Shown one piece after another: positions 10,636-42,120 of a DNA stretch of 64,000 nt. Each line of letters starts with the position of its first letter. Positions within the stretch are counted from its first letter, which is position 1. The notes under the pieces are model-generated. The model saw only the letters and a program-made list of their open reading frames with translations, made no database searches and was not told where the DNA came from. The position numbers and the translations under genes are program-made. Origin of the DNA: Mobula hypostoma (lineage: Eukaryota); contig NC_086118.1 of NCBI RefSeq assembly GCF_963921235.1, positions 54,312,001 through 54,376,000 of the forward strand, given 5' to 3'.

Positions 10636-10830
<195 letters not shown>

Positions 10831-13920: not shown

Positions 13921-13957
13921 ATTATTATCATCTTCCATTCAGCATCAACACTCTTAC

Positions 13958-15296: not shown

Positions 15297-15569
<273 letters not shown>

Positions 15570-18818: not shown

Positions 18819-18859
18819 TAACATGCATATGGGCTCTAGCTTGATTACACAATATGAAT

Positions 18860-20420
18860 CCAGCGTCACTTTTGCTAGTACTCTATCATATGCAACAACT
18901 GCAATCTTAGAGAGTTTATGGCATCTGGTGTGACTGCATGAAGTCAGCGCAGGCCATGGGAAAATGTGATGTGTTCCCTTGTTTGACTTCTGTTGTGCAG
19001 ATATAAATTGATTTAAATTTCTATTGGTGGTGTAAAAAAAATCTTGGTCCTTTACATCTGGGTTAGGGCTGCCAATGTGTTGGCATTGCTTCTATTGGAA
19101 CAGTGATAGAGGTCTTCACAAAAAGTGTTGTTACAATAATATCATTGATCTTTGCTATTAAATCAGAAACATCCATGTATCTTGATGAAGGAGGTACATC
19201 AGTGAAGCTCTTTCCCATGGCATTTGTCTTAAGTTCAGCTTTATTCTTGGCACGTCTTCCATCTCGTTGTAAATCGGTTTTAACGAAGTACCAGAAGTGC
19301 AGCTGGTGAAGAGGGCAATGGGTTCAACTAAAGTCTCAGGATGTGATGTTCATCAGTGTCAGGAGCTGGGCAATGGTATGGACTTTCACTGTTCCACAAA
19401 CTGTATACACTGTTTAGTTGCATATTCAGCATCTTTAGTGATCGTCCATCCATACTCTGTGATGCAGCATAATAAAGTTGTGGTTCTTTGAACCATGTAG
19501 ACCAAAGTTCAAAGTAAATGTATGATCAAAGTATGTATATATTACCATATGCTATTCTGACATTCATTTTCTTCCAGGCATTTACAGGAAAAAGGAAATG
19601 TGATAGAATTTTACAGAAAAAGCTGTTCATATCCGGACAAAGACTGACAAATATCACTGTGCAAGAGAAGACAAATTGTGCAATTAAGAATAACACTGAG
19701 AACATGAGTTGTGAAGAATGCTTGAAAGCACAGTGGTGGTAACTGAAGTTATTCACACTGGTTCAGGAGCCTGTGGGTTGTAGATAAGTAACCTGAATGT
19801 GGTGGCACGGGACACAAGTCTCCGTAGCTCCTGCTCGACAGCAGCAGTGATGGTGGGGGTCTGTGATGGATGCTGCTTTCTTGTGGCAGGGCTCCCTCCC
19901 TGTAAATGCACTCAATGTTGGGGAGGGTTTATTTAACTCTCTAACTGCACTGTGCATATATCACCAATTAATACCCTATATTTACATACTTTTCAGTATT
20001 CTCATTTTGGAAGGAGGGATTCATACAGTCAAGTCATCTGCAGGACCTAAACTATTTACAGGTTCACCAAGTAACGCTGATCATCACAGGGAATTTACAT
20101 TGTTGATGCTGCGTCTACTTCTGACTCAATTAAGTAAGCCTCATGTTATTTCTTCCATCACCTCCATTACATCAACTTCTGGATTACACTCATAATCATT
20201 TAACAGTTTTCTCAGGTATACCTCTTACACTAGACTTGGGTGTAGAAATTAGATGATCAGAATAGCTTTGATTTGCTACTAAGGCTTTTAACTTGTATAC
20301 TAAGGGTTAAATATTTGCCATTTTAATTAGCATTGGTGTAATGAAGGAATAGCTTCTGTTACATTATAAAAGCAATTCCTGTCTGTCTTTAGTATGAGAA
20401 CACCAACAGAGAGCAGAGTT
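18860..20420 (-). mobile_element. Possible highly degraded Gypsy pol (integrase zinc-finger region), interrupted by a Rex/Babar tail at about 19500-19925
   Basis: Weak hand-translated similarity only: DDLTV..IP..MRIL and RTTTL....YGWTITKDAEYATKQC, resembling the H2C2 region. Confidence 0.25.
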
Positions 20421-21696
20421 TCACTTGAGATTCTCAGCACAGTGGTACTATCAGCAACCCATTCTCTATACAAATTCACCCGTTTAGTGCTGATTCTATT
20501 AATGTCTCTTTCCTGAACACTATGAGCTAGTAGTATATAATTATTTGATAGAAAATATCTTTTCAGTCATTCTGTGCATGAACTGAAAGAATAACATACC
20601 CAATTGGATGACTAAGGCTTCCAGAATGATTAGTCTGAGTTGGACGGCTGTTTTATCCTGATCCTATTTCTCCTGGCGCACTATTACACATCATGGTACT
20701 GCCTGCATGCATTTTACCCCATTTCTGTTGTTTCTAACAATGCAGCATTTGGTAGGTCCTCAACCTAATCTCTGTGCAAGATCAAAATGGAAACAAGTAA
20801 TTGCATAACTTGAAGATTCATCCTATCTAGTCATTGCTAGTGTGTAGTGTATGCTCTCAATCCTTACTCTGAACACTAATAATACAGACAATAGGAGAAA
20901 CACAGAAGATATGGAGAGCTGCTGGAATGTGTGAAACTTGCTTGTCTAACTAGCATGCCTGTATGCGTCACACATTTATGTCATACATTTGCACATACCA
21001 CCGCAGTTACTACTATGGATAGATTGAGATGGGGTTTTCAATTATAGAAGCATCACTTTAATTCCTTTAGAATTTTGTTCAATGTAATGCTGGCTAAGGT
21101 GGCTGTCTTTGCACCTAACCCTTTGATGTCAGTATATGTCATCTTGAGCGATGCCATGCTTGGTACATGGAGATCTCTTGCAGGATGATGGGATGATTCT
21201 CGTCAATATATATGAAACACACTGTTAGTGCTGAGTATTAAATTTGTGCTAACTACTGAACATTCTAAAATTGGGACTAACCGTCTTTAGCCTATGTAGC
21301 AGAAGGACTAAGCATAGGGAGCTTTATTATCAATTACCAGTAAGTAACAATATATCTTGTCAAAGGATCACTGAATTGAACAGAATGTTTTTAATTGGTT
21401 GTTTTGTGAAAGAGCTATGCCTCCTGAATTTCTGCTCGGAGACCAATTTTCGAAAACTGATATTTCAGCCATGTGTAAATAAAGAACTGTCATTTAATCT
21501 TTGCAGACAAAAACATGGCTGTCTTTAAGTAGCCAATACATAATGACTACAAAACTGATTGATTTTTTAGCTTCTCTAACTTTGTAAAACTATGACAGAT
21601 GATTTGGGGAAAAGCAGTGCTGTCCAGATGCAGACCAGGACTGTACAGAGGCCCCAACTTGCTATTATTTCCCTTTGTTCGATGGAAGGTGGTGCA

Positions 21697-21985
21697 AGAT
21701 TAAAGATTAGCTGTCTTTGTCATATGTTTCAAGGTGCATAAAACATACCGTGAAATGTGTTGTTTGATTCAGTGACCAGCACAGTCTGAGGATGTGCGGG
21801 GGCAGCCCACAAGTTACTAACTCTAATTTGTACATCTTTGGAATGTGGGAGGAGACTGGAGCACTCGGAGGAAATTGGAGTCACGGGGAGAGCGTCCAAA
21901 CTCTTTACAGACGGTGGTGGGGATTGAACCCTGATCTTCGGATCGCCGGTGCTGTAAAGTATTACGTACACTAACCACCACTGTG
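21697..21985 (-). mobile_element. V-type tRNA SINE
   Basis: B box (ggttcaatcc on minus) and V domain ctccccgtgact..tttcctccgagtgctccagtctcctcccacattccaaagatgtac. Confidence 0.8.
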
Positions 21986-24900
21986 ATGTGGGAGTGATCT
22001 GGCTGTGACATCTGTCACTCTATTGATCACTTGGGTTAGTGCAAGAGTGCATTCCAAAACACCTGTAGATGAGAACTCCACCCTGAGACTGCAGTGGGGT
22101 CTGCAAGGTTTCCAAAGGCAGGCTTAACTTTCAAAGGTATATCCTACTTCCTTCCAATTTTACCATTAATAAATAGAAGTTCTGAACCCTTGCAGTCCCT
22201 GATTCCAAGTCAGTATTTTGTTGATGTGTTGTTAATGCAAATGGGTGTGGTATTGATGTGAATTTGTGTTGAAGCTGTGATTTCTGAGAGAGTATAACTG
22301 CCTAAGAAAAAGGGGTAAAGAGCTACTTTGTTCTCTTATGAGGAATCGTGGGCAGCCTGTGTCTCTTGTAATTAACCTGATTCTAGTGACATCAAAAAGA
22401 AATGTTCCAGATTTTTTAAAGCTGGCTACCATACTTCAATTATTTGTTTTTGATTCTGTGAGACACTGCATAAGCAGAAAGTAGGAAGATAATGCACAAT
22501 ATTGCACCATCAATCAAATGTGGTATGTTGTATACATCCAAATACTTGGAGGCAAGCACTTTATAGATAACAGTAATCTTATATATTTCCAGATTCCCCC
22601 CCTTTTACTTCAATTATTCATGTCACTTTATAGAAAAAGCCAATGATTTCTCAATATCTATTTTCATTTAATACCTCCTAATATAATCTGAACATCCCAT
22701 AATGTGTTGGGTTCTATCTGGCACTTTTCAGTTTGAATTAGTTACTCACAAATTAAGGCAAGTAAAATAATAATGCTGTAGTAAAATATTTGTGACATAT
22801 GTAAAGGGCTGAGAAAGAACAAGAGGAACCATAGAGATGAGTAACTTAGAGTCAAATGATGTATAGAAATAAAAATACAGGGTAAGAACAGAATAAGAGA
22901 AAAAGTAGAAATTGTACAATATTGATTTATTTTCTAGGAACTGGCTATCTGCAGGAATAAGAATGAATTATTTAAATTGAACCACTTTTGAGTCGATTGC
23001 TATTACATTTGCAATAATCCTGTTGTTAAAATATACTTGCACTACCTTTTGATGCTAACTTTTTGCAGCATTTGAAATAGAAATCCCACAAGTTCGGTGA
23101 GAGCAAAGTACCAATTACTGGGTCGCAATGCAAAAGATGCAAATCAACTAGCAGGTTGGGGAGAGTTACAACACATGGTGTATCTCTTAATCCCCAGGAC
23201 TAGATGACCAAATCTTTTCTGCAATATCCTGTGATTCATCTCAATGCTGTCTTTTTGGACAACTAGGTTGAGACGTCATATAGCTCCTACCTCTAATCTA
23301 TTAAACATGAATGTGTAAAAAAACAAATTGCTTTACAATATATCCCATTATTAAAATTAATCAATCCATTGTTAGTAAATGGTATTATGGTGAATTTTAC
23401 CACCGGCTTCCTCCTATTAAGGCAGTCCCTGTGGGCTGAGGATAACTAGCTGTTAATTATAAACTGGTGAAACCACAGATTTTTCCACTGTAGGCCCTTG
23501 ACAGGCTATGCCACTGGTTTATTTGAGAGATGGGTATAGATGGGGTAAATGCAAGCAGGCTTTTCCCACTGAGGCTGGGGGGTCTACAATCAGGGGTCAT
23601 TGGTTAAGGGTGAAAGGTGAAAAGTTTACTGGGAAACTTCCTCACTCAGAGGGTTGTGAGAGTGTGGAATGACCTGCCAGCACAAGTGGTGCATGTGAGG
23701 TAGATTTCAACACTTAAGAGAAGTTTGAATAGTAGGGGTATGGACGACTGTAGTCCCAGTGCAGGTCAATGGGAGTAAGCAGATTAAGTGGTTTCAGCAT
23801 GGACTAGATGGGCCGAGGGGTCTGCTTCTGTGCTATGTTTCTCTACGACTCTGTGGCTCACTCCTCCTCCTGTTTACTCAGGGCTTTGTTATCTTCTCCT
23901 CGAACAGAAACTAGGCCAACCTGATGATTTGACTCTGTACCTACACGTGAGAGCTTGCTGAATATAAACTGGAATTCATCCACAAAATGGCAACTACAGC
24001 ATCATTTATTAATTGAGATACTTCCAACCTGCACTGGCTGATGTACAAGTCGAGTTATTTCTCTCTGTTTTATTGTTTTAGCAATATATTTACCTTTCCC
24101 TTTAATGTGCAAAAGCAGAAACCTACTGTTGCAGAAGCCAACAATAATCATTTTCATACCCCAGGTGAAAAATAACACAATTAACAACAGATTATATGAT
24201 AACATTATAAGATATGAACCCATGGTGTAAAGTAAGCTGACACCCACCACTTGCATAGGAGAATGTCATTCTACGACTATCACACAGCAAACAAGATACC
24301 TTATTATAACCAAAAAGATTCATTGCCTCTAGCACAAGTCAGGGGACTGCCTTAAAATCAATACGTTAGAGTTGCTATGGAGATAGTACAGCTTACACTG
24401 GCACCCGGAATGGATCATTTACAAGAACAATACCCTAAAACTGAATATTGAATTTATCCAGTGATCAGCACAGCTATATAGTAACCTTACATTTATGCAG
24501 CTCAATAAATATCTCAAGATACTGTACAGGAGTACTATAAAACTCGTATTAATATGGACAGTCAAAGGCCTGACCAGAAGCCAATTCTGAGGCGCACACA
24601 AAAAGAGAAGATGGAGGCAGAGGGTTTGAGATTTTGCTGTAGAAAGCATGTTTGCTGATGTTGGGGTAGCGGAAATTGGGGATCCTAAGGAGTTGTAGAA
24701 CCAAAAAGGTTAAGGCTTCTGCTTAAATGGTTGATGAGGGTAGCCCCAGAAGAGCTGCCAGTGGTACTTGTGGATAAGACAGATTGTGCAGAGGGAGAAT
24801 AATAATAGCCAATGGGGATCCAATATACCATGGGAAGGACATGATTAAAGTAGCTGTAGTTCGTGTATTCTCAGTGTGATTTGAAGTGATTGCCCAAACC

Positions 24901-25774
24901 TTGACATTGAGATGGACAGCACTGAGCCATGTTGGAAAAATGCTTACACATGAGTGTAAATGGTATCATTTTTATTAAGATTTCAACAATGATTAGCTTG
25001 GCACAAAAATTACTGTACTTGCTTGGATAGTTGTTCCCTCAAAGTAAATGTTACTTTCCAAGTCTTAGTGACTGTTAGAAAATAGGGAATTGTAGTCAGA
25101 GGGTATGAAGTACAGTAATTATTAATATAAGCAAGAACTAGCTTACCACTTCCAAATGTGATGGACATGCAGTAATAGGTCTCAAAATTATATGGTTGGC
25201 AGCACAAACAAATGCTTGTTGATCTCAGGAGCAGTAAGAGGAAATTGAAAAGATGTGCTTTGGAGACTAACAAGTCGGTGCTTGATCTCTCCACAAATAC
25301 CTGCATAAAGGTACTGTATCTGTTAAACATTGGGACAAAGCAAAGGAAATTATTCCAATATGCACTGGCCAAACGTAAAGACAGTGGTGCTAGGTTAATT
25401 TGATCATATTGAAACCCCAGCCATGACTACGTTGAGAGGGAAATGCATTCATCCAGAGAAACTATGAATGAAGTTATAAGCATTAGAACCATGCATCAGA
25501 AGTGAGACATCTTGGGCTTTGCACATATTTTGCTCCATGTTTCCAACTCCAGAATGAGGTCACAGGAAATGACAGATAGGCATTTTGCTAATTAGCACTT
25601 CAAACAAGCTCATGGTCATATTTGTTGTGCTTGCGACACCACCCCCTCACGATTTGTAAGAGAGGAAGTTTAAATCTTCTCTTCGACGGGAGTTCAGTGA
25701 AATCACCTCTCAGTGCTCCCCATCTATAATTTCTTCGGCTCTTCAACTTTTTGACAACATTTTGACTCAGACTC

Positions 25775-25975
25775 CCTTCTCCTATCATTTCCGATCTCCC
25801 CCTCCCCCTCCCACTTTCAAATCTCTTACTAGCTGTTCTTTTAGTTAGTCCTGACGAAGGGTCTTGGCCCGAAACGTTGACTCTACCTCTTCCTAGAGAT
25901 GCTGCCTGGCCTGCGGCGTTCACCAGCAACTTTGATGTGTGTTGCTTGAAATTCCAGCATCTGCAGATTTCCTCG
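25775..25975 (+). mobile_element. Solo Penelope pLTR (young family)
   Basis: Near-identical to the 3' terminus of the element at 28092-30065, in the opposite orientation. Confidence 0.85.
25847..25882 (+). ncRNA. Minimal type-I hammerhead ribozyme motif (antisense to PRKCA)
   Basis: AGTC CTGACGA A GGGT CTTG GCCC GAAA CGTT GACT. Core intact, stem I AGTC/GACT, palindromic ACGT stem III, cleavage triplet GUU. Confidence 0.75.
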
Positions 25976-26039
25976 AAGTTGTGAAGAAGTTCTGGGTTTC
26001 AGAGTGTTGGGTCTTTTAATCTAATCATGATTCCATCCC

Positions 26040-27205
26040 ACATGCCCCTCCATTTGCCTATTCAAGATGTATCTGCCACTATGATCGCTCTGACAGTGCC
26101 TTCCACACACTCATTACTCTCTGTGTAAACACAAAACTGACATCACCCCTATAATTTCCTCCAATCATCATAAAATTACGTCCTCCAAATTGGATCAACT
26201 TTATTACTTACATCCTTCACATACATGAGGAGTAAAAATCTTTACGTTAAATCTTAGTCTAAATGTGCAATTTATAGTAATTTGTAATAAATAGTATGTA
26301 GAACAGGACAGTCAATATAATACAAATGCAATTGTATCAGTGTGAATTAATCAGTCTGATGGCCTGGTGGAGGAAGCTGGCCTGGAGACTGTTGGTCCTG
26401 GCGTTTATGCTGTGGTACCGTTTCCCGGATGGTAGCAGCTGTAACAGCTTGTGGTTGGGGTGACTCGGGTCCCCAGTGGTATTAGCCTTTGCCATCCTGG
26501 GGGAAAAATGCTGGCTGTTCACTCGATCAATGCTTCTCATCATCTTACACACCTCCATCAACTCTCCTCTCACCCTCCCTCACCTCAAAAAGAAAAACCT
26601 TAGCTTGTTCAACCTTTCCTCATAAAACATGTTATCTAGTCCTGATAAATCTCCTCAGTAACCTCTCCAAAGCCTCCCCAACCTTCCTATAATGAGGTGA
26701 CCAGAACTGAGCACAGTGTAGTCTAACCAGAGTTTTATAGAGCTACAACATTATCTTGCAGCTCTTGAATTCAATCCCGCCCCCACTTATGAAGGCCAAC
26801 ACAACATACACACCCTATCAATTTGAGCTGCATCCCTAAGGAACCTGTGGACTTGGACCCCAAGATCCCTTTGTTCCTGCCATTAACTTTGTACTCTGCC
26901 ATCAGATTCGACTTACCAAAGTGAATCACTTCACACTTTTCCCGATTGAACTCCATTTGCCACTTCTGCATCCTATCAATGTCTCACTGTGACCAATGAA
27001 AACCTACTACACTATCCACAACACACCATCAACCTTTGTGTCAACTGCATTCTTACTAACACACCCCTCTACTTCCTCATCTAAGTCAGTTTTAAAAATC
27101 ATGAAGAGCAGGGGCCCTAGAACAGATCCCTACAGAACACCACTAGTCACAGTCTTCCAGGCAGAATATGCTCTATCTACAACCACACTGTTCTTTCAGT
27201 GGGCA
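26040..27205 (-). mobile_element. CR1 fragment with a nested Rex/Babar 3' piece (about 26190-26475)
   Basis: WQMEFNREKCEVIHFG and MRGELMEVCKMMR (CR1) abut DPSHPNHKLLQLLPSGKRY (Rex/Babar). Confidence 0.75.
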
Positions 27206-27474
27206 AGTATTACAACAGTGACTCAACTTTGACTATGTGCTCAAATTTCTAGTACCAAATGATCAAGCCTGTCTTTACATTTACCACCCAGTTTTCTTCG
27301 TATTTTTATCTGTGGTTGAGACTTCTGTACTGCTGAGCATATTCACTGCAAAGCCGTGTTTGGCCTTTGTCACAGAAGCATGAATGACAGAAATGCAACT
27401 ATTATGTTTATCCTACAAAGCAACTTGTCATGTTGATAAAATTATCAAAATCCCAAATCCCATTTTCACAGTAT

Positions 27475-27768
27475 TTATTTTTATTTAGAGATACAGTGCG
27501 GAAGAGGCCGTTCCAGCTCTTCCAGCCACACCGTCCAGCAAACCTGATTTAACCTTAAACCTAATCGCAGGACAATTTACAATGACCAGTTAACCTACTT
27601 GGTATGCCTTTGGACTGTGGGAAGAAACCGGAGGACCCGGAAAAAAAAAAATCCGCGCATTCCACTTGGAGGACATACAGAGACTCTTTACAGAGGGTAC
27701 TGGGATCAAATTCTGAACTCTGATGCCCCAAGCTATACTAGGGTTACGCTAACCACTATGCTACCGTG
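27475..27768 (-). mobile_element. HE1-like V-SINE with CR1-derived tail
   Basis: tRNA head (cacggtagcatagtggttagcg), V domain (ccgggtcctccggtttcttcccacagtccaaag), tail ccgcactgtatctctaaataaa. Confidence 0.75.
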
Positions 27769-28091
27769 TTGGAAGAATTGGATCAATCAGTGTGTATAAC
27801 AAATTTTTAAATTATGAAGAGGCAATAGAAGATGGAATCAATAATCAGATGGGAAATAATTAGCAATTACAAAATTGATTTTAACTTTCCACTTTGATTC
27901 AGACACAGAGGAAGTGCATGGAGAAAAGAAAGCTGAATTCCTGTAATGTACAACAGACTCCTTCCTCGGCTGAATTTTTTGAGCCCTGCAGGAACAGAGA
28001 TGTAAGCTGTTCCGGTTAAAATTAACCACGTCAATCAGATGAGTTAAATGTGGGTAAAAACCCTGGTACAGCGGCAAGCAGCAAAATAAAA

Positions 28092-30065
28092 AGCAACACA
28101 CATCAAAGTTGCTGGTGAACGCAGCAGGCCAGGCAGCATCTCTAGGAAGAGGTACAGTCGACATTTCGGGCTGAGACCCTTCGTCAGGACTAACTGAAGG
28201 AAGAGTGAGTAAGAGATTTGAAAGTGGGTGGGGGAGGGGGAGATCCAAAATGATAGGAGAAGACAGGAGGGGGAGGGATGGAGCCAAGAGCTGGACAGGT
28301 GATAGGCAAAAGGGATATGAGAGGATCGTGGGACAGGAGGTCCAGGGAGAAAGACAAGGGGCGGGGGAACCCAGAGGATGGGCAAGGGGTATAGTCAGAG
28401 AGACAGAGGGAGAAAAAGGAGAGTGAGAGAAAGAATGTGTATAAAAATAAGTAACAGATGGGGTACGAGGGGGAGGTGGGGCATTAGCGGAAGTTTGAGA
28501 AGTCAGTGTTGATGCCATCAGGTTGGAGGCTACCCAGACAGAATATGAGGTGTTGTTCCTCCAACCTGAGTGTGGCTTCATCTTTACAGTAGAGGAGGCC
28601 GTGGATAGACATGTCAGAATGGGAATGGGATGTGGAATTAAAATGTGTGGCCACTGGGAGATCCTGCTTTCTCTGGCGGACAGAGCGTAGGTGTTCAGCA
28701 AAGTGGTCTCCCAGTTTGTGTCGGGTCTCGCCAATATATAGAAGGCCACATCGGGAGCACCGGACGCAGTATATCACCCCAGCCGACTCACAGGTGAAGT
28801 GTCGCCTCACCTGGAAGGACTGTCTGGGGCCCTGAATGGTGGTAAGGGAGGAAGTGTAAGGGCATGTGTAGCACTTGTTCCGCTTACAAGGATAAGTGCC
28901 AGGAGGGAGATCAGTGGGGAGGGATGGGGGGGACGAATGGACAAGGGAGTCGCGTAGGAAGCGATCCCTGCGGAAAGCAGGGGTGGGGAGGGAAAGATGT
29001 GCTTAGTGGTGGGATCCCGTTGGAGGTGGCGGAAGTTACGGAGAATAATATGTTGGACCTGGAGGCTGGTGGGGTGGTAGGTGAGGACCAGGGGAACCCT
29101 ATTCCTAGTGGGGTGGCGGGAGGATGGAGTGAGAGCAGATGTGCGTGAAATGGGGGAGATGCGTTTGAGAGCAGAGTTGATGGTGGATGAGGGGAAGCCC
29201 CATTCTTAAAAAAAGGAAGACATTGCCTTCATCCTAGAATGAAAAACCTCATCCTGAGAGCAGATGCGGCGGAGACGGAGGAATTGCAAGAAGGGGATGG
29301 CATTTTAGCAAGAGACAAGGTGGGAAGAGGAATAGTCCAGGTAGTTGTGAGAGTCCATAGGCTTATAGTGGACATCAGTAGACAAGCTGTCTCCAGAGAC
29401 AGAGACAGAAAGATCAAGAAAGGAGAGGGAGGTGTCAGAAATGGACCAGGTAAATTTGAGGGCAGGGTGAAAGTTGGAGGCAAAGTTAATGAAGTCAACA
29501 AACTCATCATGTGTGCAGGAAGCAGCACCAATGCAGTTGTCGATGTAGCAAAGGAAAAGTGGGGGACAGATACCAGTATATGCCTGGAACATGGACTGTT
29601 CCACAAAGCCAACAAAAAGGCAGGCATAGCTGGGACACATACAGGTGCCCATGGCTACACCATTAGTTTGGAGGAAGTGGGAGGAGCCAAAGGAGAAATT
29701 ATTAAGAGTGAGGACTGATTCTCCTAGACGGAGGAGAGTGGTGGTAGAGGGGAACTGGTTACGTCTGGAATCCAAAAAGAAGTGGAGAGCTTTGAGACCT
29801 TCCGGGTGGAGGATGGAGGTATATAGGGTCTGGACATCCATGGTGAAAATAAGGCAGTGGGGGCCAGGGAACTTAAAATCATTGAAAAAATTCAGAGTGA
29901 GAAGTGTCATGAACATAGGTGGGAAGGGATTGGATAAAGGGGGATAAAACAGTGTCAAGGTATGCAAAAATGAGTTCAGTGGGGCAGGAGCAAGCTGAGA
30001 CAATGGGATATTTGGAGATTTCATGAACTCCAGGATCAAGCCAAATGAAGTAGAAGAGGTAAAGG
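28092..30065 (-). mobile_element. Penelope-like retroelement, young, 5'-truncated: RT, GIY-YIG endonuclease and 3' pLTR
   Basis: RT motifs TMDVQTLYTSI, GVAMGT.M.PSYACLF, YIDN (catalytic D to N) and FLDL. GIY-YIG with Cys motif GVIYCVRCSRCGLLYIGET. A premature stop at about 29305 makes the copy inactive. Confidence 0.92.
28156..28191 (-). ncRNA. Minimal type-I hammerhead ribozyme motif, sense to PRKCA pre-mRNA (intron 10)
   Basis: Minus strand: AGTC CTGACGA A GGG TCTCAG CCC GAAA TGTC GACT. Core intact, GUC cleavage triplet, stem III palindrome changed from ACGU to AUGU. Confidence 0.7.
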
Positions 30066-31249
30066 AATAAAACTGGGAGATTTCCAAAAAGAAATTGCAT
30101 ACTTAGTTTTAAAACTGCTTTGGTTGTGGATCCCTTGCTGTAAACTTTAGAAGCACCCAATACTTTCACACCATAGGCTGAGGATTGGGACTTGGGGTCA
30201 GGTTGATGAGAAGGAGACTGAGGGTGTTGGGGGCAGTGATAATTAGATGAATCAAAGCCTGGAATATCTGGATTGGGGCCTTAGAGGCAGCAATCAGATG
30301 GATGTTTGGGCCTCTGATATAAGCCTTGTGGAGTCACTGAGCCTGTGGAAAGAGAACAATTGTTGGAGGTTGCTCGTGGTTTGGGGAATCGGTCAAATTT
30401 CCTCTCTAACATCTACTGATCCTATAATTCTCATTACTGCAGTTCACTCCTGAAAGTTCATCTCAATCATGTAGCACTGAAGAGGCAAAAACTAGGAGAT
30501 TGAATTTGTTGTAATATCCTTTTAAAAAAAAGCCAATTGCTCCAGTTTCATTATGTCATTGAAAGAATATTACTGAACACTTACTGTGAAATTGAAGAGG
30601 GCTATTAAGTTTGTAAGAATAACATTCTAAATAAGTGGCTATAGACAAGATGAGAACGTGGAGGACGCTACAAAAGGATCATTATTTTATAAACATGCAA
30701 GTAGAAAAAAACAAACGGAATCACGGGAGTGAGGTCTGTTGAATAGCAACACCAATGATCAATTATGTAATAATTATTTCCCTTTTGGTTTTTGCTAAGA
30801 GCAGGATATTAGAGAGGAGGGGAATCCTGAAGTGATTGAGAGTGAGAGGGATTATATGACAGTATGTGAGTAAATTTTTTCAGTGTTGATTGAGCTAAAT
30901 AAAGAAGAGTGTGGGCCAACAGGATTGATCAGAGGATGAGGTTGGAGACCAAGGAAGGAAACTAATGAAGTCCTAGAAGTTAAATTATTGAGAGCGGACA
31001 TGCACATTAGGAGTGGAAAGAAGTCCGCAGGGAGATAAAAGTAGGTGTACTCATGATTTAACACGGGGGGTTGATTAGAAATTTCTTCAGATCTTTCAAA
31101 TTATGTAACTGATTAATAAAACTGCATGCTTTAATTGACCAGCTCCATGTTAATACCTTTTGCATAAACATGCCTACTTCTTTGTACATTGGCTTCAAAC
31201 ATGCACAATCTTAGAATCATCTTAAGTAACTGTTTAACGTTAATATTTA

Positions 31250-32895
31250 ATGTCAACATAAACTGCTTACAGAAACCTTTGTGACAGCAAGGCAATGAGT
31301 GATGCAACAAAAGGAAAGCCCCCTCTCCCCCTGAGGAACAGGCACCCTGTCTGACCACAGTCAAGGTGAGGAGGATCCTAGCCAGGGTAAATCAACGCAA
31401 AGCTGCAGGGCCACACAACATACCCGATTGTGCAGCCCAGCTAACAGAGGTCTTAATGAATAGGCTTAATGTCTCTTTGCAACAGTTCACTGTACCTACA
31501 GGCTTCAAGGCAGCCACCACCATTCCATTGCCCAAGAGAGTATGGTAACCGGCCTAAACAATTACCACCCAGTGGCACTGACCTCAACAATCATTAAGTG
31601 CTTTGAGTGGCTGGTAATGGATCATATAAAGTCTCACCTTCCAGCTACATTGGACCTTTTCCAGTTCGCTTATGACTCAAACGGGTGCTTCAGCCCCTCC
31701 ACTCCGTCCTGCCCCACCTAGGAAACAATGCCTCATAGGCCAGGTTATCGTTCATCAACCTCAGCTCGACATTTAACATGGTCATTCCTCAGAGGTTGGT
31801 GGGTAAATTACCCTCACTGGGGCTCAACACCCCTCTCTGTAACTGGATCTTGGACTACTTGATCCCAATCAAATCAAGTTAGCAGCAACATCTCAAGCTC
31901 CATCGTGCTGAGCACTGATGTCCCCCAGGGATGTGTGCTCAGCCCACTGCTCACTCTCGACTGCACTGCCAGATCCAGCTCAAACCACATCATCAAGTTC
32001 GCTGAAATGCCACAGTGGTTGGCTTCATCATCAACAACGATGAGTCGGCATACAGAGAGGAGGTAGACAGGCTTGTCACATGGTGTGAGAACAACAACCG
32101 GAGTCTCAGCATGGACCAGACAAAAGAGATGATTGGGGACTTCAGGAAGGCACAGGTCAACCACTCTGCATTGCACATCAAAGACTCTGCCGTGGAGAGA
32201 GTGAAGAACACAAAGTTCCTTGATGTGCACTTAATGACTGATCTAAACTGGACCCACAACACCTCCTCATTAGTCAAGAAGGCACAGCAATGTCTACACT
32301 TCCTGATAAGATTAAGGCATGCAAAGCTTTCTGCCCCAATTCTAATAACTTTCTAAAGGAGCACAATCAAGAATATCCTGTCTGGCTGCATCATTGTGTG
32401 GAATGGAAGCTACAAAGCATTGGACTGCACGACCTTACAGTGCACAATAAGAAACTGCTGAGGGGATGACCAGGGTCTCCTTCCCCACTATTTGTGACAT
32501 TTACTGGGAACGTTATATGTGAAGGGCCTGAAGCATTGTTGAGGATCCCTTCCACCCATCCTGTAATCTTTTTGACACACTCACTGCAGTCAAGTGGGAA
32601 GTACAAGAGCATCAGGACCAGGACTGCCAGACTGGGTAACAGCTTCTTCCCTCAGACTGTGAGACTACCGAATACCCTGCCACCACCGCTATCTCATCAC
32701 TAGGACAGTGAGTTGTTTACTGTTTACCTGTGCTGCACACTACATGCCGTTTAAATTATATTTTATTAACTAAATTGTGGTAATATTTTATTCGATGTGC
32801 TGTGTGTGATACATGTATTATGGGTGCACTGTGTTTTGGAGAAATGTTTGGTTATATGCATGTACTGTACAGTCAAATGATAAACTTGAACTTGA
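31250..32895 (+). mobile_element. Rex1/Babar LINE, 5'-truncated, degraded RT plus 3' UTR
   Basis: RKAAGP, PQGCVLSPLL, ESAYREEVDRLVTWCENN, KTKEM..DFRK and VKKAQQCLHFL remnants. Tail taaacttgaacttga. Confidence 0.85.
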
Positions 32896-34089
32896 ATTAG
32901 CAAGAGATGGAGGATTATGCTCTTTTTAAACAAAGTTCCTTGTTAAATGCCAATGCTATTTGGAATTATCCAGTTCTATTAAGATTCTAGAATAGTTCAA
33001 TATTTCCCTTTAAGAATATAGTTTTGTCAGCTGGAACTACATGTGAAATAAAAAAATACAGCCCAATGAAAATTAATCTAAAAACCACCAGATATTGTTG
33101 TGCTCTGACAGGAATTAAGAGTGAAGTAGAAAAGGTACAAAACAAAGCCAAAAAAAGCCTCATCCTGTGGAAGACTTCGAGGGTTCAGATTAAACTGCAA
33201 CAGTTCTGCGAATGACAAAATTTTTATTTTTAAGTAGAGATTTAATGAAGGATTTTTCGGCACTAAATTTGAATGTATATACAGGAGAAGTAGCATGAAA
33301 ATATGTAAGAAAATCAAGCACTCAGAAATAAATTAATGCCTATTAATAAAATAAAGCAATAAATTAAGGTTACAAATGGACTGAAACTGGATTTGGAGTT
33401 GAGGGGTTTGGAGAGGGGATTCATAATTAGATTTCATGCTTACGAAGCATCCATCTGCATCGCAAGGATCTTCTAGTTTGAGAAAGTCCAAACTCAAAAC
33501 CTTGTGGCTCCCTAATACTTGAAGGAATATTAGGTATTACACCGGGAATTAATTTGATTGAGGTTGCTTCAGAGCTGTTGTTGAAAGTGTCAGTTTTAAG
33601 CACAGAAGTTACAGAAAAAATTATAAAAATGATTAGGAAAACATGAGGTTAAAGTAGAAACTGGAATTTCCTAACAAATTTTAAGGTAAGAATAATTCTA
33701 ACAATTAAACGTAAAAACACAGAACAGTACAGCACAGGAAAAGGGGCCCCACAATATTAAGATGAAATAATTAGTCATTAAATGCCCAACTAAACTAATT
33801 CCTTTTCTTTGTACAATATTCATATCCTTCCATTCCTTGTATGTTCATGTACCTATCTAAGAGTCTCTTGGACGCCTCTATTGCATTGGCATTCACCACT
33901 ATTTCTGGCAATGTCCATCATTCCCTGCGTAAAAAAAAACTTGGCCCACCTGTCTTCTTTAAACTTACACCCTCTCACCTTAAATGAATGCCCTCTGCTA
34001 TTAGACATTTTAACCTTGGAAAAAGGGTAATGTCTGTCTACTCTATCAATGCCTATCGTAAGCATATAAACCTCTATCAGGTCATTTTT

Positions 34090-35016
34090 GGCGATTCTGT
34101 TTGGGGGGGGTGTTAATCACAACCGGAATATAGGTGATAAGTGGCTAATGCACTCAATTTCGTTTCTAAAAGGATTTATCTAACGAATTTAATATTAAAC
34201 ACACAGCGCATCTTTTTCTCGCATGAATATAGTGATAAGTCAATTATCGGGGAGGACGGGAGCTTGAAGTAAGTGTTGAACGAACTTATAGTAGAAATGG
34301 TAGAGGCAGGTTCGACGTTATCATTTAAAGAAAAATTGGATAGGTATATGGACAGGAAAGGAATAGAGGGTTATGGGCTGAGTGCAGGTCGGTGGGGCTA
34401 GGTGAGAGTAGCGTTCAGCATGGACTAGCAGGGCAGAGGTGGCCTGTTTCCGTGCTGTAATTGTTATATGGTTATATAAGTCACTTATAAGTCAGTAGCA
34501 TCATAACATTTTAAGTAACATTTGGATATTAATCACGCAGCACATATTTTCCCCGTATGAACATATAAAATCATTGCAACACACCAATATCGCTGAATCA
34601 GTGGGAGCCCTGGGCTTGTTTTCCTGCAACAAGACGGTCCTATCGAGGGGCGATGGGAGACAGCGATACTCGAAGGAGGTTCCTTATGTCCAGTCTATTC
34701 TGCAATTTAGTTTTCGTTGCGTTCATTGCAGAGATATGTTGGAAATGGAAGCAATGTTTTCAGTGCTTTCGTGGCTATCTCAGGATATTCAGCCTTGACT
34801 TCGATCCAGAATGCCAGCAGAGATGTTATGTCAAACATACTTTTCAGCCCGCTGTCATTTGCAAGCTCGAGGAGTTGATCTTCCCACGCTGACATGGATG
34901 ACGCGTAGATAATGACCTTGCATGCGTTCAAATTCAACAGTGGGCGTGACAGGGAATGAGGAAAGGTTTCCTCACGGCCCGGTACCGGTCCGCGGCCCGG
35001 TGGTTGGGGACCGCTG
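34090..35016 (-). mobile_element. hAT (Charlie/Buster-type) non-autonomous element with transposase C-terminus and internal CR1 tail (about 34250-34478)
   Basis: TIR CAGCGGTCCCCAACC ends at 35016. Dimerisation-domain remnant FWIEVKAEYPEIATKALKTLLPFPT and terminal DRLVAGKQAQGSH* (stop at 34598-34600). Confidence 0.85.
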
Positions 35017-35272
35017 GTATGGGGCATGTTCTGCTTGCAAGGGGAAGTGCCAGGAAGGACAAATGCACAAGGGAGTCACATAGGGAGCAATCCCTTCGTA
35101 AAGCAGAAAGTGGGGAGGGAAAGACGTGCTGCTTGGTGGTGGGATCCCATTGGAGATGGTGGAAGTTTTGGAGAATTATGTGCTGGATGCGGAGGCTGGT
35201 GGAGTGGTAGGTGAGGACAAGGGGAATCCTATCCCAAGTAGGGTGGCGGTAGGATGGGGGAGAGCAGACGTG
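35017..35272 (-). mobile_element. Penelope internal fragment
   Basis: Homologous to about 28860-29145 of the larger Penelope copy. Confidence 0.75.
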
Positions 35273-35983
35273 CGTCGTCAGAGATCCCCACCACCCAGGT
35301 CATGCTCTCTTCTCACTGCTGTCATCAGGTAGAAGGTACAAGAGCCTCAGGACTCACCACCACCAGGTTCAAAAACAGTTTCTACCTCTCAACCATTCGG
35401 TCCTTGAATAAAAGTAGACAACTACACTCATTTGCCCTATCAGTGAAATGTTCCCGCTTTGTGAAGCATGCTCCTCAAGACTTGGCTTAAACTAATAAAG
35501 GAATTAGTATTTTATCTACCTCCTGCAACAAGTCTGTGCTGGATTGTGATTCATGACAGACTGGTTCAGTACATTTCTCGCATATCTCACTATCTAAAAT
35601 ATTTAAGTTTGGTGACATCACATACAGAACTGAAGATGCCATCATTTATCCTGTCTTCAAATTCAGCTCATTCGGTCTCCCCCACAAAATTTGAACTTTC
35701 CATCCTGGGCAACATCCTGGTGAATCTGCTCTATATCTCCCCAGTTCATTCACATCCATTCTGTAAAGTGGTAATTAAAACTGCACACAAATGGCCAGCT
35801 GTGGTCTAAACAAAGTTTTATAATGGCCTTCATATTGTTTTATTCTATACCCCAGTAAATAAAGACCAACAACTTACATGCCTTCTTCACTACCTCACCT
35901 ACATGTGAGAGTCTGTGGAGTCATAGATCAAATTCCCTCACTACTCCCAAAGGCCCTGCCATGCATGATATATCCTTATTAAT

Positions 35984-36275
35984 AGGCATTCGTTACTCTC
36001 GTGAGACCATGGATTTGCACCTTGGAAGGTTTCCAGGACGCAGGCCTGGGCAAGGTTGTATGGAAGACCGGCAGTTGCCCATGCTGCAAGTCTCCCCTCT
36101 CCATGCCACCGATGTTGTCCAAGGCAAGGGCACTAGGGCCAATACAGATTGGCACTGGTGTCATTGCAGAGTACTGTGTGGTTAAGTGCCTTGCTGAAGG
36201 ACACAACACGCTGCCTCGGCTGGGGCTCGAACTAGCAACCTTCAGATCACTAGACCGACACCTTAACCACTTGAT
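35984..36275 (-). mobile_element. tRNA-derived SINE (CORE-like central motif)
   Basis: A and B boxes plus a gtgtccttcagcaaggcacttaac motif. Closely similar to 37109-37415. Confidence 0.8.
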
Positions 36276-37108
36276 TAACGCATCATATATCCTTACTGGG
36301 CCATACAAAATGCATAACTTGCCCTTATCGGGATTAAGTTTCATCTCCCTTTGCTCGAGCAAACTTTCCAGCTGGCCAGTTATTGTTCGTCAACCGAAGA
36401 GAATTCTTTGATTATCAACACCACTAGCACTTTTTGTGTCATCAATAAACTTGCTAATTGCACCTATTGATGAAACCCTGATGTCAATGCTGGGCTATGA
36501 AGCTCAGCTAGTAAGAAGTGAGCCAAAGTTTCAGCATGCCAGGTTCCAGAGTCTGCAGCACCCAAAGACGAAATGTCACAAAATTGTACAGCACAGAAAA
36601 TTGTACTGACCATCAAGTAGCTAATTATTCTGATCCATTTAACAACACTTTATCTAAAGCCTTACTTTGTCATGGCAGTGCAAGTGCTCGACTGAATACT
36701 ACTGAAGTGTTGTGAGTGTCTTTGCTTCGACCTGCCCCTCAAACAGTGCATTTCAGTTTCCAGCCACCCTCTGAGTGAAAAAGTTCTTCCTCAGATTCCT
36801 TCTGTGTCTTATTCACTACTCTAAACCTATGCTTTCTAAGTTATTTAATTATCAAAGTACATACATGTCTCCACATACAGCCCTGAGATTCATTTTCTTG
36901 TAGGCATTCACAGTAAACACAAAGAAACACAATAGAATCAATGAAAAAATGCACACAAGACAGACAATCAATGTGAAAAGACAAACTGCAAATACAAAAA
37001 AAATTTAAAAATTAAATAAACAATAAATATCAAGAACATGAGATGAAGAGTTCTTGGAAGTGAGTCCATTGTTTGTGGGGGAAAAATCCTTACTATCTAC
37101 CCTTTTGT

Positions 37109-37415
37109 GGGCACGTGGCCAAGTGGTTAAAGCATTGGACTAGTGATCTGAAGGTCGTGAGTTCCAGCTCCAGCCGAGGCAGCACGTTGTGTCCTTGAGC
37201 AAGGCACTTAATCGCACATTGCTCTGTGGTGACACTGGTGCCAAGCTGTATGGGTCCTAATGCCCTTTCCTTGGACAACATCAGTGTCGTGGAGAGGGGA
37301 GACTTGCAGCATGGGCAACTGCTGGTCTTCCATACAACCTTGCCCAGGCCTGCACCCTGGAGAGTGAAGACTTTCCAGGCGCAGATCCATTGTCTCGCAA
37401 GACTAACGGATGCCT
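37109..37415 (+). mobile_element. tRNA-derived SINE (same family as 35984-36275)
   Basis: gtggccaagtggttaa (A box), gagttccagctcc (B box), gtgtccttgagcaaggcacttaa. Confidence 0.8.
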
Positions 37416-38324
37416 TAACCTACCCTTTTGTCCTTCATAATTTTGTTTAACTCGATTGTTGTATACGTACTTCTGTATTGAAAATGTTTCAACCTAACGT
37501 ACAGAGGGGGACGGGATTGTTAGTAATAATACATTTGACTGTGAATTAACTTAATTCACTAGTTTTGAACTAAAGAAAGATGCATTAAACAGGAGGAACA
37601 AACTGGCATTCCTGTTGTGAGGCTCCTTCAGGTTTCAATCGAAACCAAATTACACTGTCTGCTGCCAGCATAGCTAGAATGCAATTATTTTCTTGGAGAC
37701 GTGGTATTCTGCCAGAAGAGAAAGGATGCTTTTCCCTGCATGGCTTTGCCCACTACAGACGTCAAAATTATAAATCCTGCTTCTCTAAACAGCAGTGGAT
37801 TGAATAGGATAGGAAAAAAATATACCTCTGCAACTATTAGAAACTTAAAAACTTGTCTTTCTGTATGTACGTATCAGTGTTCATCTCTGGGACAACTTGC
37901 TGTAAAACACTGCAATTCAAGACTGTCATCTCAGGTGGGTGACCTGGTCATCACTTGTCCCTACATTAGAAGACAGATCGCCCCGTTGCTGTCACAGACT
38001 GGCTGCTTCGTTCTCCTCTATTACAATATTAGCAATTCTGCAATAGTGGAAAACAAAGTAAGCTGCATGTGCTGGAATATGAACCAAAAGCAGAAATGCT
38101 TGAAGAACTCAGCCAGTCAGGGATTCTCAATTCTGAAGGAAGAGTTGCTGACTTAAAACATTCATTGGTTTATCTTTTAATAGATGCTGCTTAATTGGGC
38201 AAGTCCTTCCAGCATGTGGTTTTGCTACAAAAATGTTTTAATGGCTGCAACGACTGCAAAAAGCACAGTGTAAAGTGCAATTCGTTAGTCCCATTTTCAG
38301 ATTTCCCAAACTTTCCTCACTGAA

Positions 38325-39292
38325 AGACCACAGTCTGTGCAGATCAGAAATAACATCTCCAGCTTATTGATAATCAACACTGGTAGCCTTAAGGGATATG
38401 TGCTTAGCCCACTGCTCTACTCTCTCTACATCCATGACCGTGTGGCTAGGCACAGTGTAAATGCCAGCTATTAATTTGCTGACAACACAACTATTGTTGG
38501 TAGAATTTCAGATGATGACTAGAAGGCATACAGGAGCATGACAGATCAGCTGGTTGAGAGGTGTTGCAGCAACAACCTTGTACTCAACGTCAGTAAGACC
38601 AAAGAATTGACTGTGGACTTTGGAAAGGGTAAGGTGGGGTTCTCATCAGCAAATCAGATATGGAAAGGAATTTCATGTTCCTGAGCGTCAACATCTCTGA
38701 TGATTTATCCTGAGCCCAACATACAAAGAAGGCACAAAAGCTGATATATTTCATTAGGAGCTTGACGAGATTTGGTATGTTACCAAAGATACTTGCAAAT
38801 TTCTACAGATGTACTGTGGAGAGCTTTCTAACTGGTTGTATTACCGTCTGGTATGGAGGGGGGGAGACTGCACAGGATCCAAATAAGCTGCAGAAAGCTG
38901 TAAACTCGGTCATCTCCATCATTGGCACTAGCCTCCCCAGCATCCAGGACATTGACAAGGAGGTGGCATTCATGATTAAAGACCCCTGTCACCCAGGACA
39001 TACCCTCTTCTCATGCTACCATCAGGTACGAGACCCTGAAGGCACAATCTCAAAGATTCTGGAACAGCTTCTTCCCCTCTACCATCAGATTTTTGAATGG
39101 ACATTGAACACATGAACACAACCTTACTTTTTTTTCTCTCTTTTTGCACAACTTATTTAATTTAACTTTTAAAATATATAAACACCTCAAACTATAATTT
39201 ACAGTTTTATTATGTATTGCAATATACTGCTGCCACATGGCAACAAATTTCACAACATGTGCCAGTGATATTAAACCTTATTCTGATTCTGA
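38325..39292 (+). mobile_element. Rex1/Babar LINE 3' fragment
   Basis: FYRCTVESFLTGCITVWYG and IKDP.HPGH remnants. Tail attaaaccttattctgattctga. Confidence 0.8.
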
Positions 39293-39889
39293 CTTTATTT
39301 CAAAACATGGTGCCTAGTTTGGTTTGAAAATCTTTCCTTTGGTTCGCACTCTCCCTTAGCACATTAAAAGTTTGTCCCTTGTATTTATTTTTTCTTCCTC
39401 TATCAAGTATTAGAAACAAGTGATGATATAAATAGAGCTTAAGAAGGATAAAGTTTTCAATTTTCACATCAGTTTGAAATCACCTCAGATAAGTTTTTCC
39501 CTGCATGATATCCAAGATCAAAGTTACCTTTTCAAAACCAATTGTCAGGATTGTATTTAAAGTGATAATGTTCTGAGGATTGTCAGTAAGTGCTGTGAGA
39601 AACACTTTTCTGTAGTCTCTGCAATGCTCTGAAGCCAGCCATAAAGTTTACTTTTTTACTTGTATCCAGGGCCTTTAATCTAACAACAAAGGGAAGAGAG
39701 TGAGATTCATGCCTCACTGTAACTTCAAAGTCTAATTATTCTTGTAATGCTGGAAATGTGACACCACTTTGGCCAGGTGTTCGTTCAATGCTAGAATACA
39801 AAAACTTCAGTCACAATCAAATCCAGAGTAATACTGAGTTGCCAGCTTCAGTCTGGCACAGCAACAACACTATCCATTGGCCCATAGCT

Positions 39890-40122
39890 GACGCTATGTG
39901 GACATCAGGACTATGAGGAGGGAACGTCGACTCAGACCATGAGAGGCCTGCGTCAGGCATTTTCATGCCTTACAAGGCGCAGATTGGAAGTCTATGTGGG
40001 GCGCCACTCCTCACACAGACTAGAGCAATGTGTGATTAAGTGCCTTGCTCAAGGGCACAAACACGCTGCCACAGCTGAGGCTCGAACTGACCTTGAGATA
40101 ACACACTTGGCCAACGTGCCCA
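39890..40122 (-). mobile_element. tRNA SINE with the same head and core as the 37109 copy but a different 3' half
   Basis: Shares cacgttggccaagtg and gtgcccttgagcaaggcacttaatcacacattgctct, then diverges. Confidence 0.7.

Positions 40123-41868: not shown

Positions 41869-42120
<252 letters not shown>

What the first reader, a model, noticed from the sequence alone, without database searches (positions are those of the whole stretch)
28156..28191. Hammerhead ribozyme motif in the sense strand of PRKCA intron 10
Seen: the pLTR of the young Penelope copy reads AGUC-CUGACGA-A-GGG UCUCAG CCC-GAAA-UGUC-GACU on the transcribed strand. That is the full hammerhead core (CUGANGA / GAAA / NUH = GUC) with a 4-bp stem I and a short stem II. 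Established: Penelope-like elements carry minimal type-I hammerheads whose tiny palindromic stem III favours cleavage as dimers. Inference: the kinase pre-mRNA carries a potentially self-cleaving RNA, and other copies in the same transcript could supply the dimer partner in cis. The family palindrome ACGU is AUGU here, so this copy may be weakened.
Basis: partly seen in the sequence, partly recalled or inferred. Interest (0 to 1): 0.7.

Follow-up and report, generated by a model that had tools for sequence, protein, structure and literature searches.

The report
Penelope retrotransposon hammerhead motif in intron
The hammerhead (self-cutting RNA) motif is really there, on the same strand as a protein kinase C gene, but it is one ordinary copy of the stripped-down motif that Penelope-like jumping genes carry by the thousand in this ray genome. 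Nothing at this locus suggests that it cuts the kinase transcript.

Summary
Observation confirmed. The minus strand 28191->28156 reads AGUC-CUGACGA-A-GGGU(CUCA)GCCC-GAAA-UGUC-GACU. All hammerhead core residues are intact, and cleavage would fall between 28160 and 28159.

The motif lies about 75 nt from the 3' end of a 5'-truncated Penelope-like element (PLE), 28083-~30170, whose frame is broken. The element's reverse transcriptase (RT) and GIY-YIG endonuclease remnants are on the same strand. It matches the published PLE minimal hammerhead ('min-HHR') point for point.

Classical protein kinase C (PKC) kinase exons are also on the minus strand. The motif is therefore sense, inside one 26,488-nt intron (41877->15390). 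Whether the gene is PRKCA or PRKCB, and the exon number, could not be settled.

The functional inference is not supported locally:
- The monomer has no helix III and is predicted to fold as an inactive rod.
- The only other same-strand copy in this intron has a dead core.
- The two upstream copies are 29-31 kb away, in another intron, with broken helix I.
- An inverted tail copy 2.1 kb downstream can lock the whole motif into a 172-bp duplex (-308 kcal/mol).

Published PLE hammerheads cut poorly, or only with dimers or PLE protein. Available runs are contigs, so RNA ends could not be read. The scan has already noted this family hundreds of times in this genome. Verdict: ordinary, a new member of a known kind.

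The parts
28156..28191 (-). Minimal type-I hammerhead motif (copy A). Helix I AGUC/GACU, CUGACGA, unpaired A, helix II GGGU-CUCA-GCCC, GAAA, UGU, C17 at 28160. Predicted cleavage between 28160 and 28159.
28083..28483 (-). 3' non-coding terminal region (pLTR/tail) of the Penelope-like element. The element's 3' boundary is at about 28083-28093.
   Evidence: All window copies end here. Contigs with many different flanks break at 28092/28093 (table 7).
28484..28810 (-). GIY-YIG endonuclease remnant of the PLE (VIY-x10-YIG, GETRHKLGDHFAEH).
   Evidence: Pfam GIY-YIG E=0.0016, below the curated cut-off
28811..29304 (-). RT-EN linker region, broken into short ORFs in several frames. This copy is not coding-competent.
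29305..30169 (-). Reverse-transcriptase remnant of the PLE, 5'-truncated.
   Evidence: RVT_1, weak. (Atlas clusters with RVT_1 + HTH_animal +/- GIY-YIG). (83-87% identity to Mobula hypostoma proteins, E down to 4e-99).
25776..25973 (+). Solo PLE tail (copy B), inverted relative to A. It carries an intact-looking min-HHR at 25847-25882 (+), with ACGU and U17. In the PKC pre-mRNA it appears as the complement of A's tail.
   Evidence: (I3: 172 nt, 92% complementary)
17074..18602 (-). Older PLE copy G, in the same intron and on the same strand. Its hammerhead core is dead (CCGAUGA, CAAAA, helix II broken).
15390..41877 (-). Host intron that contains the motif. 26,488 nt, GTAAGT...TTTCAG, phase 0, between the exons that encode ...LHSCFQTM and DRLYFVMEY...
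56953..57151 (.). Head-to-head pair of PLE tails (copies C- and F+). C keeps the core but has lost helix I. It lies in the upstream intron.
   Evidence: (I9)
59162..59292 (.). Fold-back fragment of a related tail subfamily (copy D). The core is intact, 15.2 is U, and helix I is mismatched.

Best explanation
The motif is a passive relic: the minimal hammerhead that every canonical Penelope-like element (PLE) carries in its terminal repeat. It was brought here when a 5'-truncated PLE copy inserted in sense orientation into an intron of a classical PKC gene.

In the element's own life cycle the motif is thought to process or mark PLE RNA. It acts only as a dimer or with PLE protein.

At this locus it is transcribed as part of the PKC pre-mRNA (inferred from strand), but it is not expected to cut it:
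- As a monomer it has no helix III.
- It prefers an inactive rod in which G5-G8 pair with 15.2-17.
- It has no competent partner in the intron.
- Once the inverted tail 2.1 kb downstream is transcribed, it can be buried in a 172-bp duplex.

The U at 15.2 and the changes in sister copies sit at CpG sites of the other copies, as expected for neutral decay after insertion.
For: Motif and coordinates.

PLE context on the same strand: GIY-YIG and RT remnants, Atlas neighbours with RVT_1 + HTH_animal + GIY-YIG, and 170 relatives, the best from rays. All copies share one 3' end.

Match to the published min-HHR definition in PMC4209133: an extra nucleotide between 9 and 10.1, the G10.1-C11.1 pair, a short helix I and pLTR location.

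Host gene strand and intron.

Energetics:
- Monomer MFE is the rod, at -12.4 kcal/mol, against -8.7 for the hammerhead-competent fold.
- Its z-score against shuffles is -0.56.
- The active-type dimer scores -12.0 (A+A) to -16.3 (ACGU version), against -24.8 to -28.2 for two rods.
- The A x anti-B duplex scores -308 kcal/mol and covers all 36 nt.

Partners: copy G is dead, and C and D have lost helix I.

Family abundance: 5,900-10,300 contigs >=95% alike per run.

Literature:
- A single PLE min-HHR shows no detectable cleavage, and dimers cut weakly (PMC4209133).
- The Anolis Poseidon hammerhead cuts only with PLE protein, and no RNA-seq ends were found at its site (PMC11167929).
Against: - All catalytic residues are intact, so activity cannot be excluded.
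- AUGU can still pair with AUGU or ACGU through G.U wobbles.
- Abundant PLE-tail RNAs or PLE protein in trans could assist cleavage.
- Nearest-neighbour energies ignore tertiary contacts and co-transcriptional kinetics. About 2.2 kb is transcribed before the inverted copy appears.
- No RNA-end data could be obtained, because only contigs were available.
Confidence: 0.8

Rival explanations
1. The motif is a weakly active ribozyme in the PKC pre-mRNA. In the minute or so before the inverted copy is transcribed, it dimerises in trans with abundant PLE-tail RNAs, or is helped by PLE-encoded protein. It then cuts a fraction of nascent transcripts and lowers PKC output.
For: - The core is intact.
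- The family is very abundant in runs that are probably RNA.
- AUGU/ACGU can form a 4-bp helix III with one wobble. The active-type A+ACGU-version dimer scores -14.5 kcal/mol.
- Protein-assisted cleavage is shown for an Anolis PLE (PMC11167929).
Against: - Published min-HHR dimers cleave poorly and mostly at non-physiological Mg2+.
- No RNA-seq ends were found at the Anolis site.
- The rod monomer and other dimer folds are 10-18 kcal/mol more stable than the active dimer.
- This copy's own ORF is broken.
- The runs' RNA status is only a guess.
- Intronic copies are common in Xenopus, at about 43% of retrozyme copies.
Confidence: 0.12
2. The relevant feature is not the ribozyme but the inverted pair of PLE tails, 28091-28262 and 25776-25947. 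In the intron RNA they form a long double-stranded stem that could attract ADAR or dsRNA-binding proteins, or loop out 2.1 kb. The hammerhead sequence is merely part of one arm.
For: 172 nt at 92% complementary, with 2,143 nt between the arms (I3). Predicted duplex energy is -308 kcal/mol, against -30 and -36 for the arms alone.
Against: - No evidence that the stem forms or matters in vivo.
- No A>G differences were seen within the arms in the contigs laid (table 3), though contigs are poor evidence.
- Such inverted TE pairs are commonplace in introns.
- No exon lies between the arms.
Confidence: 0.06
3. Chance resemblance: the hammerhead boxes are fortuitous in a GC-rich hairpin of the repeat and have no ribozyme ancestry.
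For: - Rfam hammerhead models give no hit.
- The fold's z-score is only -0.56.
- No compensatory changes were seen among the few window copies.
Against: - The full descriptor is found 2 times against 0.045 expected.
- The motif has the non-descriptor hallmarks of PLE min-HHRs: an extra nucleotide after A9, the G10.1-C11.1 pair and palindromic 15.2/16.2 in sister copies.
- It sits exactly where PLEs carry them.
Confidence: 0.02

Closest known systems
Minimal hammerheads (min-HHR) of metazoan Penelope-like elements (Cervera & de la Pena 2014, PMC4209133). Seen in Xena/Poseidon/Neptune elements of fishes and in coelacanth, Xenopus and reptiles.
   Same: - Type-I layout with no helix III or loop 3.
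- CUGANGA / GAAA / UH boxes.
- An unpaired nucleotide between A9 and G10.1, and the G10.1-C11.1 pair.
- A 4-5 bp helix I.
- A palindromic ACGU in sister copies.
- Location in the terminal repeat, on the ORF strand, of an RT + GIY-YIG element.
- Very high copy number, mostly as solo or truncated copies, with inverted pairs nearby.
   Different: - Helix II is 4 bp with a tetraloop, shorter than the 6-8 bp described for Schistosoma and Drosophila.
- This copy has U15.2, so its helix III would be A-U, U.G, G.U, U-A.
- The host is a ray, a group the 2014 paper did not cover.
Poseidon PAc hammerhead of Anolis carolinensis (PMC11167929)
   Same: A PLE hammerhead in the pLTR with stems I and II only. 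Cleavage depends on C3/G8.
   Different: In PAc the motif overlaps the ORF start, and it was shown to cut only with PLE protein. Here nothing was assayed, and the motif lies about 300 nt after the EN stop, about 75 nt from the element's end.
Intronic hammerheads of amniotes (HH9, HH10; Rfam RF02275, RF02277)
   Same: A hammerhead motif in the sense strand of an intron of a protein-coding gene.
   Different: Those are single-copy, conserved at orthologous sites, have a stable helix III and loop-loop contacts, and cleave efficiently as monomers. This one is a repeat copy without helix III, and Rfam models give no hit.
Non-LTR retrozymes of animals (PMC7229834; bioRxiv 10.64898/2026.07.22.740005)
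   Same: Type-I hammerheads related to PLE pLTRs, with many monomeric dispersed copies, about 43% of them intronic in Xenopus.
   Different: Retrozymes are tandem units that give circular RNAs. There is no tandem array here, and the nearest same-strand copies are 11 and 29 kb away.

Membership tests
PLE minimal hammerhead (min-HHR, Cervera & de la Pena 2014) | Catalytic boxes CUGANGA and GAAA with a UH cleavage site, in type-I order | tested here: met
   CUGACGA ... GAAA ... GUC on the minus strand
PLE minimal hammerhead (min-HHR, Cervera & de la Pena 2014) | [quoted passage not shown] | tested here: met
   An A lies between CUGACGA and GGGU. It is present in copies A, B, C, D and E.
PLE minimal hammerhead (min-HHR, Cervera & de la Pena 2014) | G10.1-C11.1 pair closing helix II | tested here: met
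   GGGU/GCCC in A, B and D. Copies C and E have G.U after a C>T change at a CpG.
PLE minimal hammerhead (min-HHR, Cervera & de la Pena 2014) | Palindromic 15.2-16.2 (no loop 3), allowing a shared helix III in a dimer | tested here: inconclusive
   Copies B, C and F have ACGU. This copy, with D and G, has AUGU, which is palindromic only through G.U wobbles. No variant at 28163 reached 10% of contig depth. AUGU may therefore be a subfamily trait, but a missing row is weak evidence.
PLE minimal hammerhead (min-HHR, Cervera & de la Pena 2014) | [quoted passage not shown] | tested here: met
   RT 29305-30169(-), GIY-YIG 28484-28810(-), motif 28156-28191(-). Each Pfam hit alone is below its curated cut-off. 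The order, strand and relatives agree.
PLE minimal hammerhead (min-HHR, Cervera & de la Pena 2014) | Self-cleavage, as a dimer or with protein | not testable with these tools
   Only Logan contigs were available, and they cannot show RNA ends.
Rfam hammerhead families (RF00163, RF00008, RF02275-RF02277) | Score at or near the family's covariance-model threshold | tested here: not met
   No hit at gathering on the whole window, nor at E<=10 on 1.1 kb or on 78 nt
Animal non-LTR retrozyme | Tandem head-to-tail units, each with a hammerhead | tested here: not met
   No second same-strand motif within 10 kb
Host gene = PRKCA, intron 10 | Exons are orthologous to PKC-alpha rather than PKC-beta or PKC-gamma, and the exon count is known | tested here: inconclusive
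   Bits against PDB alpha/beta: exon 41878-42048 98.5/98.9, exon 15297-15389 58.8/55.3, exon 10681-10818 83.8/87.8. Upstream exons lie outside the window or were not mapped, so the number is unverified.

The most novel reading that the evidence does not exclude
Intact sense-strand Penelope hammerheads inside introns, such as this one, are cut at a low rate in vivo. They would pair in trans with the very abundant PLE-tail RNAs, or use PLE protein. The tens of thousands of copies in this ray genome would then impose a measurable tax on host pre-mRNAs, and inverted neighbours such as copy B would act as accidental suppressors.
Probability: 0.05. Interest if true: 0.6.

Novelty: new member of a known kind. 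Interest (0 to 1): 0.15.

Why it matters
It matters little by itself. It is a correct sighting of a published class of motif, the Penelope minimal hammerhead, in a ray, and one of a very large family in this genome.

The only open question it touches is a general one: whether PLE hammerheads ever cut in vivo, and whether sense-intronic copies harm host transcripts. This locus offers a convenient natural construct for that question: an intact sense copy, an inverted masking copy 2.1 kb downstream and a dead copy 11 kb downstream, all in one intron. It gives no evidence either way.

Tried and rejected
- Rfam at gathering and at E<=10 on three nested slices gave no hammerhead hit. This was rejected as evidence against the motif, because the models require helix III.
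- A single-strand fold gave z = -0.56, and the MFE is an inactive rod.
- My first dimer evaluation failed because the drawing was pseudoknotted. I redid it with strand-swapped helix I.
- Sequencing runs: the first request was unanswered. The second returned only Logan contigs with guessed RNA status.
- Laying the contigs showed family abundance and the element's boundary. It could not show RNA ends, strand or expression.
- Contigs that break at 28161 or 28157 continue into another tail subfamily. They are not cleavage ends.
- NCBIfam gave nothing for the ORFs, as expected for a prokaryote-oriented library.
- PKC paralog assignment from three exons against PDB sequences was a tie.
- I did not submit a spliced protein as typed letters, so no full-length homology search of the kinase was made.
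- The literature search for chondrichthyan hammerhead reports was swamped by shark papers. Only the 2026 preprint mentions one chondrichthyan.
- No compensatory base changes were found among the seven window copies. There were too few copies to test covariation.

Full report
**1. What is in the sequence**

The + strand at 28156-28191 is the reverse complement of the reported string. The motif is therefore on the minus strand, 28191->28156: AGUC | CUGACGA | A | GGGU CUCA GCCC | GAAA | UGU C | GACU.

In standard hammerhead numbering:
- C3 U4 G5 A6 C7 G8 A9, then one unpaired A.
- Helix II starts with G10.1-C11.1 (3 G-C pairs plus one U.G, tetraloop CUCA).
- G12 A13 A14, then A15.1 U15.2 G16.2 U16.1.
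- C17 is at 28160 and G1.1 at 28159.
- Helix I is AGUC/GACU, plus a U.G pair.

There is no helix III hairpin.

A loose box pattern gives 5 hits in the window against 1.27 expected, and four of them are homologous copies. A full structural descriptor written for this check gives 2 hits (this one, and 25847-25882 on the + strand) against 0.045 in simulated sequence.

Rfam's curated hammerhead models do not score it at any threshold tried. The likely reason is that the motif has no helix III hairpin.

**2. What it belongs to**

On the same strand, upstream of the motif, lie two ORF remnants:
- A GIY-YIG endonuclease remnant at 28484-28810 (VIY-x10-YIG, GETRHKLGDHFAEH; Pfam GIY-YIG E=0.0016).
- A reverse-transcriptase remnant at 29305-30169 (RVT_1 E=0.009).

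Both Pfam scores are under the curated cut-offs. The other evidence agrees, though:
- The RT piece has 170 relatives. The best come from rays and sharks (Mobula hypostoma 83-87% identity, E down to 4e-99) and carry RVT_1, HTH_animal and DUF8422.
- Its nearest ESM-Atlas clusters combine RVT_1, HTH_animal and, in one large cluster, GIY-YIG.

RT followed by a C-terminal GIY-YIG nuclease is the architecture of canonical Penelope-like elements (PMC4209133, PMC8557442).

The stretch between RT and EN is split into short ORFs in several frames, and nothing PLE-like continues beyond about 30170. The copy is therefore 5'-truncated and not coding-competent.

BLAST of the element against the window shows seven further pieces of the family. 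All of them end at the same point, 28083-28093 in this copy. Contigs from public runs break at 28092/28093 into many different flanks (table 7). That is a true element terminus, and the hammerhead cleavage site lies about 75 nt inside it.

**3. Comparison with the published motif**

Cervera and de la Pena (PMC4209133) defined the 'min-HHR' of metazoan PLEs. It has the catalytic boxes only, no helix III or loop 3, a short helix I and pLTR location. Three hallmarks were not part of their search descriptor:
- a conserved G10.1-C11.1 pair;
- palindromic 15.2/16.2.

The ray motif has the first two. Sister copies B, C and F have the third (ACGU). This copy, with D and G, has AUGU.

In the aligned copies, the differences in and next to the core are transitions at CpG sites of the other copies:
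- 15.2 C>U in copy A;
- C17>U in B;
- G8>A and G16.2>A in E;
- C11.1>U in C and E.

This is what neutral decay of methylated CpGs would give (inference). No variant at 28163 reached 10% of contig depth. AUGU may therefore be the state of a whole subfamily rather than a private lesion, but a missing row is weak evidence.

**4. The host gene**

Six-frame motif searches found classical-PKC kinase exons on the minus strand:
- ...NFLMVLGKGSFGKV (about 42704-42745);
- MLSERKGT...LHSCFQTM (41878-42048);
- DRLYFVMEY...KEPQAV (15297-15389);
- FYAAE...GIIYR (13957-14019);
- DLKLDN...TPDYIAPE (10681-10818).

Splice signals are canonical: ATG|GTAAGT at 41878/41877 and TTTCAG|GAT at 15390/15389.

The motif is therefore in the sense strand of a 26,488-nt phase-0 intron that lies wholly within the window.

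Against PDB sequences the three exons tested score the same for PKC-alpha and PKC-beta. The sums are about 241 and 242 bits. 'PRKCA' and 'intron 10' are neither confirmed nor contradicted.

**5. Would it cut the pre-mRNA?**

Nothing local suggests so.

(a) Fold. The monomer's minimum-energy fold is a rod in which G5-A6-C7-G8 pair with 15.2-17. It scores -12.4 kcal/mol, against -8.7 for the fold that keeps helices I and II and leaves the core free. The sequence is no more stable than its shuffles.

(b) Dimer. A hammerhead-type dimer sharing helix III scores -12.0 kcal/mol for A+A. It scores -14.5 for A plus a version of the same sequence with ACGU restored, and -16.3 for two such ACGU versions. 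Two rods score -24.8 to -28.2, and the unconstrained dimer optimum is about -30.

(c) Partners.
- The only other same-strand copy in the intron (G, 17074-18602) has CCGAUGA, CAAAA and a broken helix II.
- Copies C (57029-57056) and D (59168-59195) are 29-31 kb upstream, beyond two exons. Both fail helix I.
- C is also locked in a 78-bp, 99% hairpin with F (I9).

(d) Masking. A solo tail in the opposite orientation (B, 25776-25947) lies 2,143 nt downstream in the transcript. A's tail and the complement of B are 172 nt long and 92% complementary (I3). They are predicted to form a -308 kcal/mol duplex that pairs 33 of the motif's 36 nucleotides.

(e) Published biochemistry:
- A single Schistosoma min-HHR showed no detectable cleavage, and dimers and trimers cut weakly.
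- The Anolis Poseidon hammerhead cut only when PLE protein was added. No RNA-seq reads began or ended at its site (PMC11167929).
- Craig et al. consider the function of PLE hammerheads still unclear.

**6. Reads**

The run index returned only Logan contigs whose RNA status is a guess. Laid on 25600-30400, they show:
- 5,870-10,331 contigs per run at >=95% identity on the PLE part, a third of them >=99%.
- The summed depth peaks over the tail bin that holds the motif.
- The unique flanks have only a few exact low-depth contigs.

This shows a very abundant, recently amplified family and confirms the locus.

**7. Context from the scan**

This family has been noted many times in the same (devil-ray) genome: 436 notes hold the words 'hammerhead' and 'Penelope'. 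One follow-up claims more than 80,000 intact-looking copies. These are unchecked notes. My contig result agrees in direction only.

With such numbers, sense-strand intronic copies must be common. In Xenopus about 43% of related retrozyme copies are intronic.

**8. Verdict**

The classification as a Penelope minimal hammerhead is right, and so is the sense orientation in a classical PKC intron. The proposal that the kinase pre-mRNA carries a working or cis-dimerising ribozyme is not supported by the anatomy of this intron.

The most likely reading (about 0.8) is a passive, probably inactive relic of a known kind. Low-level trans- or protein-assisted cleavage (about 0.1) remains possible and is testable as described under next steps.

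Noticed in passing
window 25776-25947 (+) with 28091-28262 (-): Inverted pair of Penelope tails within one PKC intron: 172 nt, 92% complementary, 2,143 nt apart, predicted RNA duplex of -308 kcal/mol. A possible long intronic dsRNA.
   Followed up: partly
window 56962-57149: Head-to-head Penelope tails forming a 78-bp, 99% hairpin with a 32-nt spacer that holds rearranged hammerhead boxes. It matches the inverted-insertion by-product described for PLEs (PMC8557442). It is already listed as a separate finding of this window.
   Followed up: partly
window 59162-59292: A second fold-back made of a related tail subfamily. The core CUGACGA...GAAAUGUC is intact, but helix I is mismatched.
   Followed up: partly
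   Followed up: partly
window 32015-32356 (+): ORF with a Pfam ALKBH8_N hit (E=5e-11). From my own knowledge this is probably part of a LINE-type retrotransposon next to the Penelope copy, not a host gene.
   Followed up: no
window 36032-36273 with 37120-37361: Another inverted repeat in the same intron: 242 nt, 86% complementary, 846 nt between the arms. Its identity was not examined.
   Followed up: no
protein P0011: A protein labelled Proteus mirabilis, on a 474-nt contig, is 71% identical to this ray Penelope RT. This is most likely animal DNA contaminating a bacterial assembly.
   Followed up: no
proteins P0002 and P0004: NCBI models named 'chitinase domain-containing protein 1 isoform X1' (Mobula hypostoma) and 'nicotinamide riboside kinase 1 isoform X1' (Amblyraja radiata) match the Penelope RT at 87% and 63% identity. 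These gene models have probably swallowed a transposon fragment.
   Followed up: no
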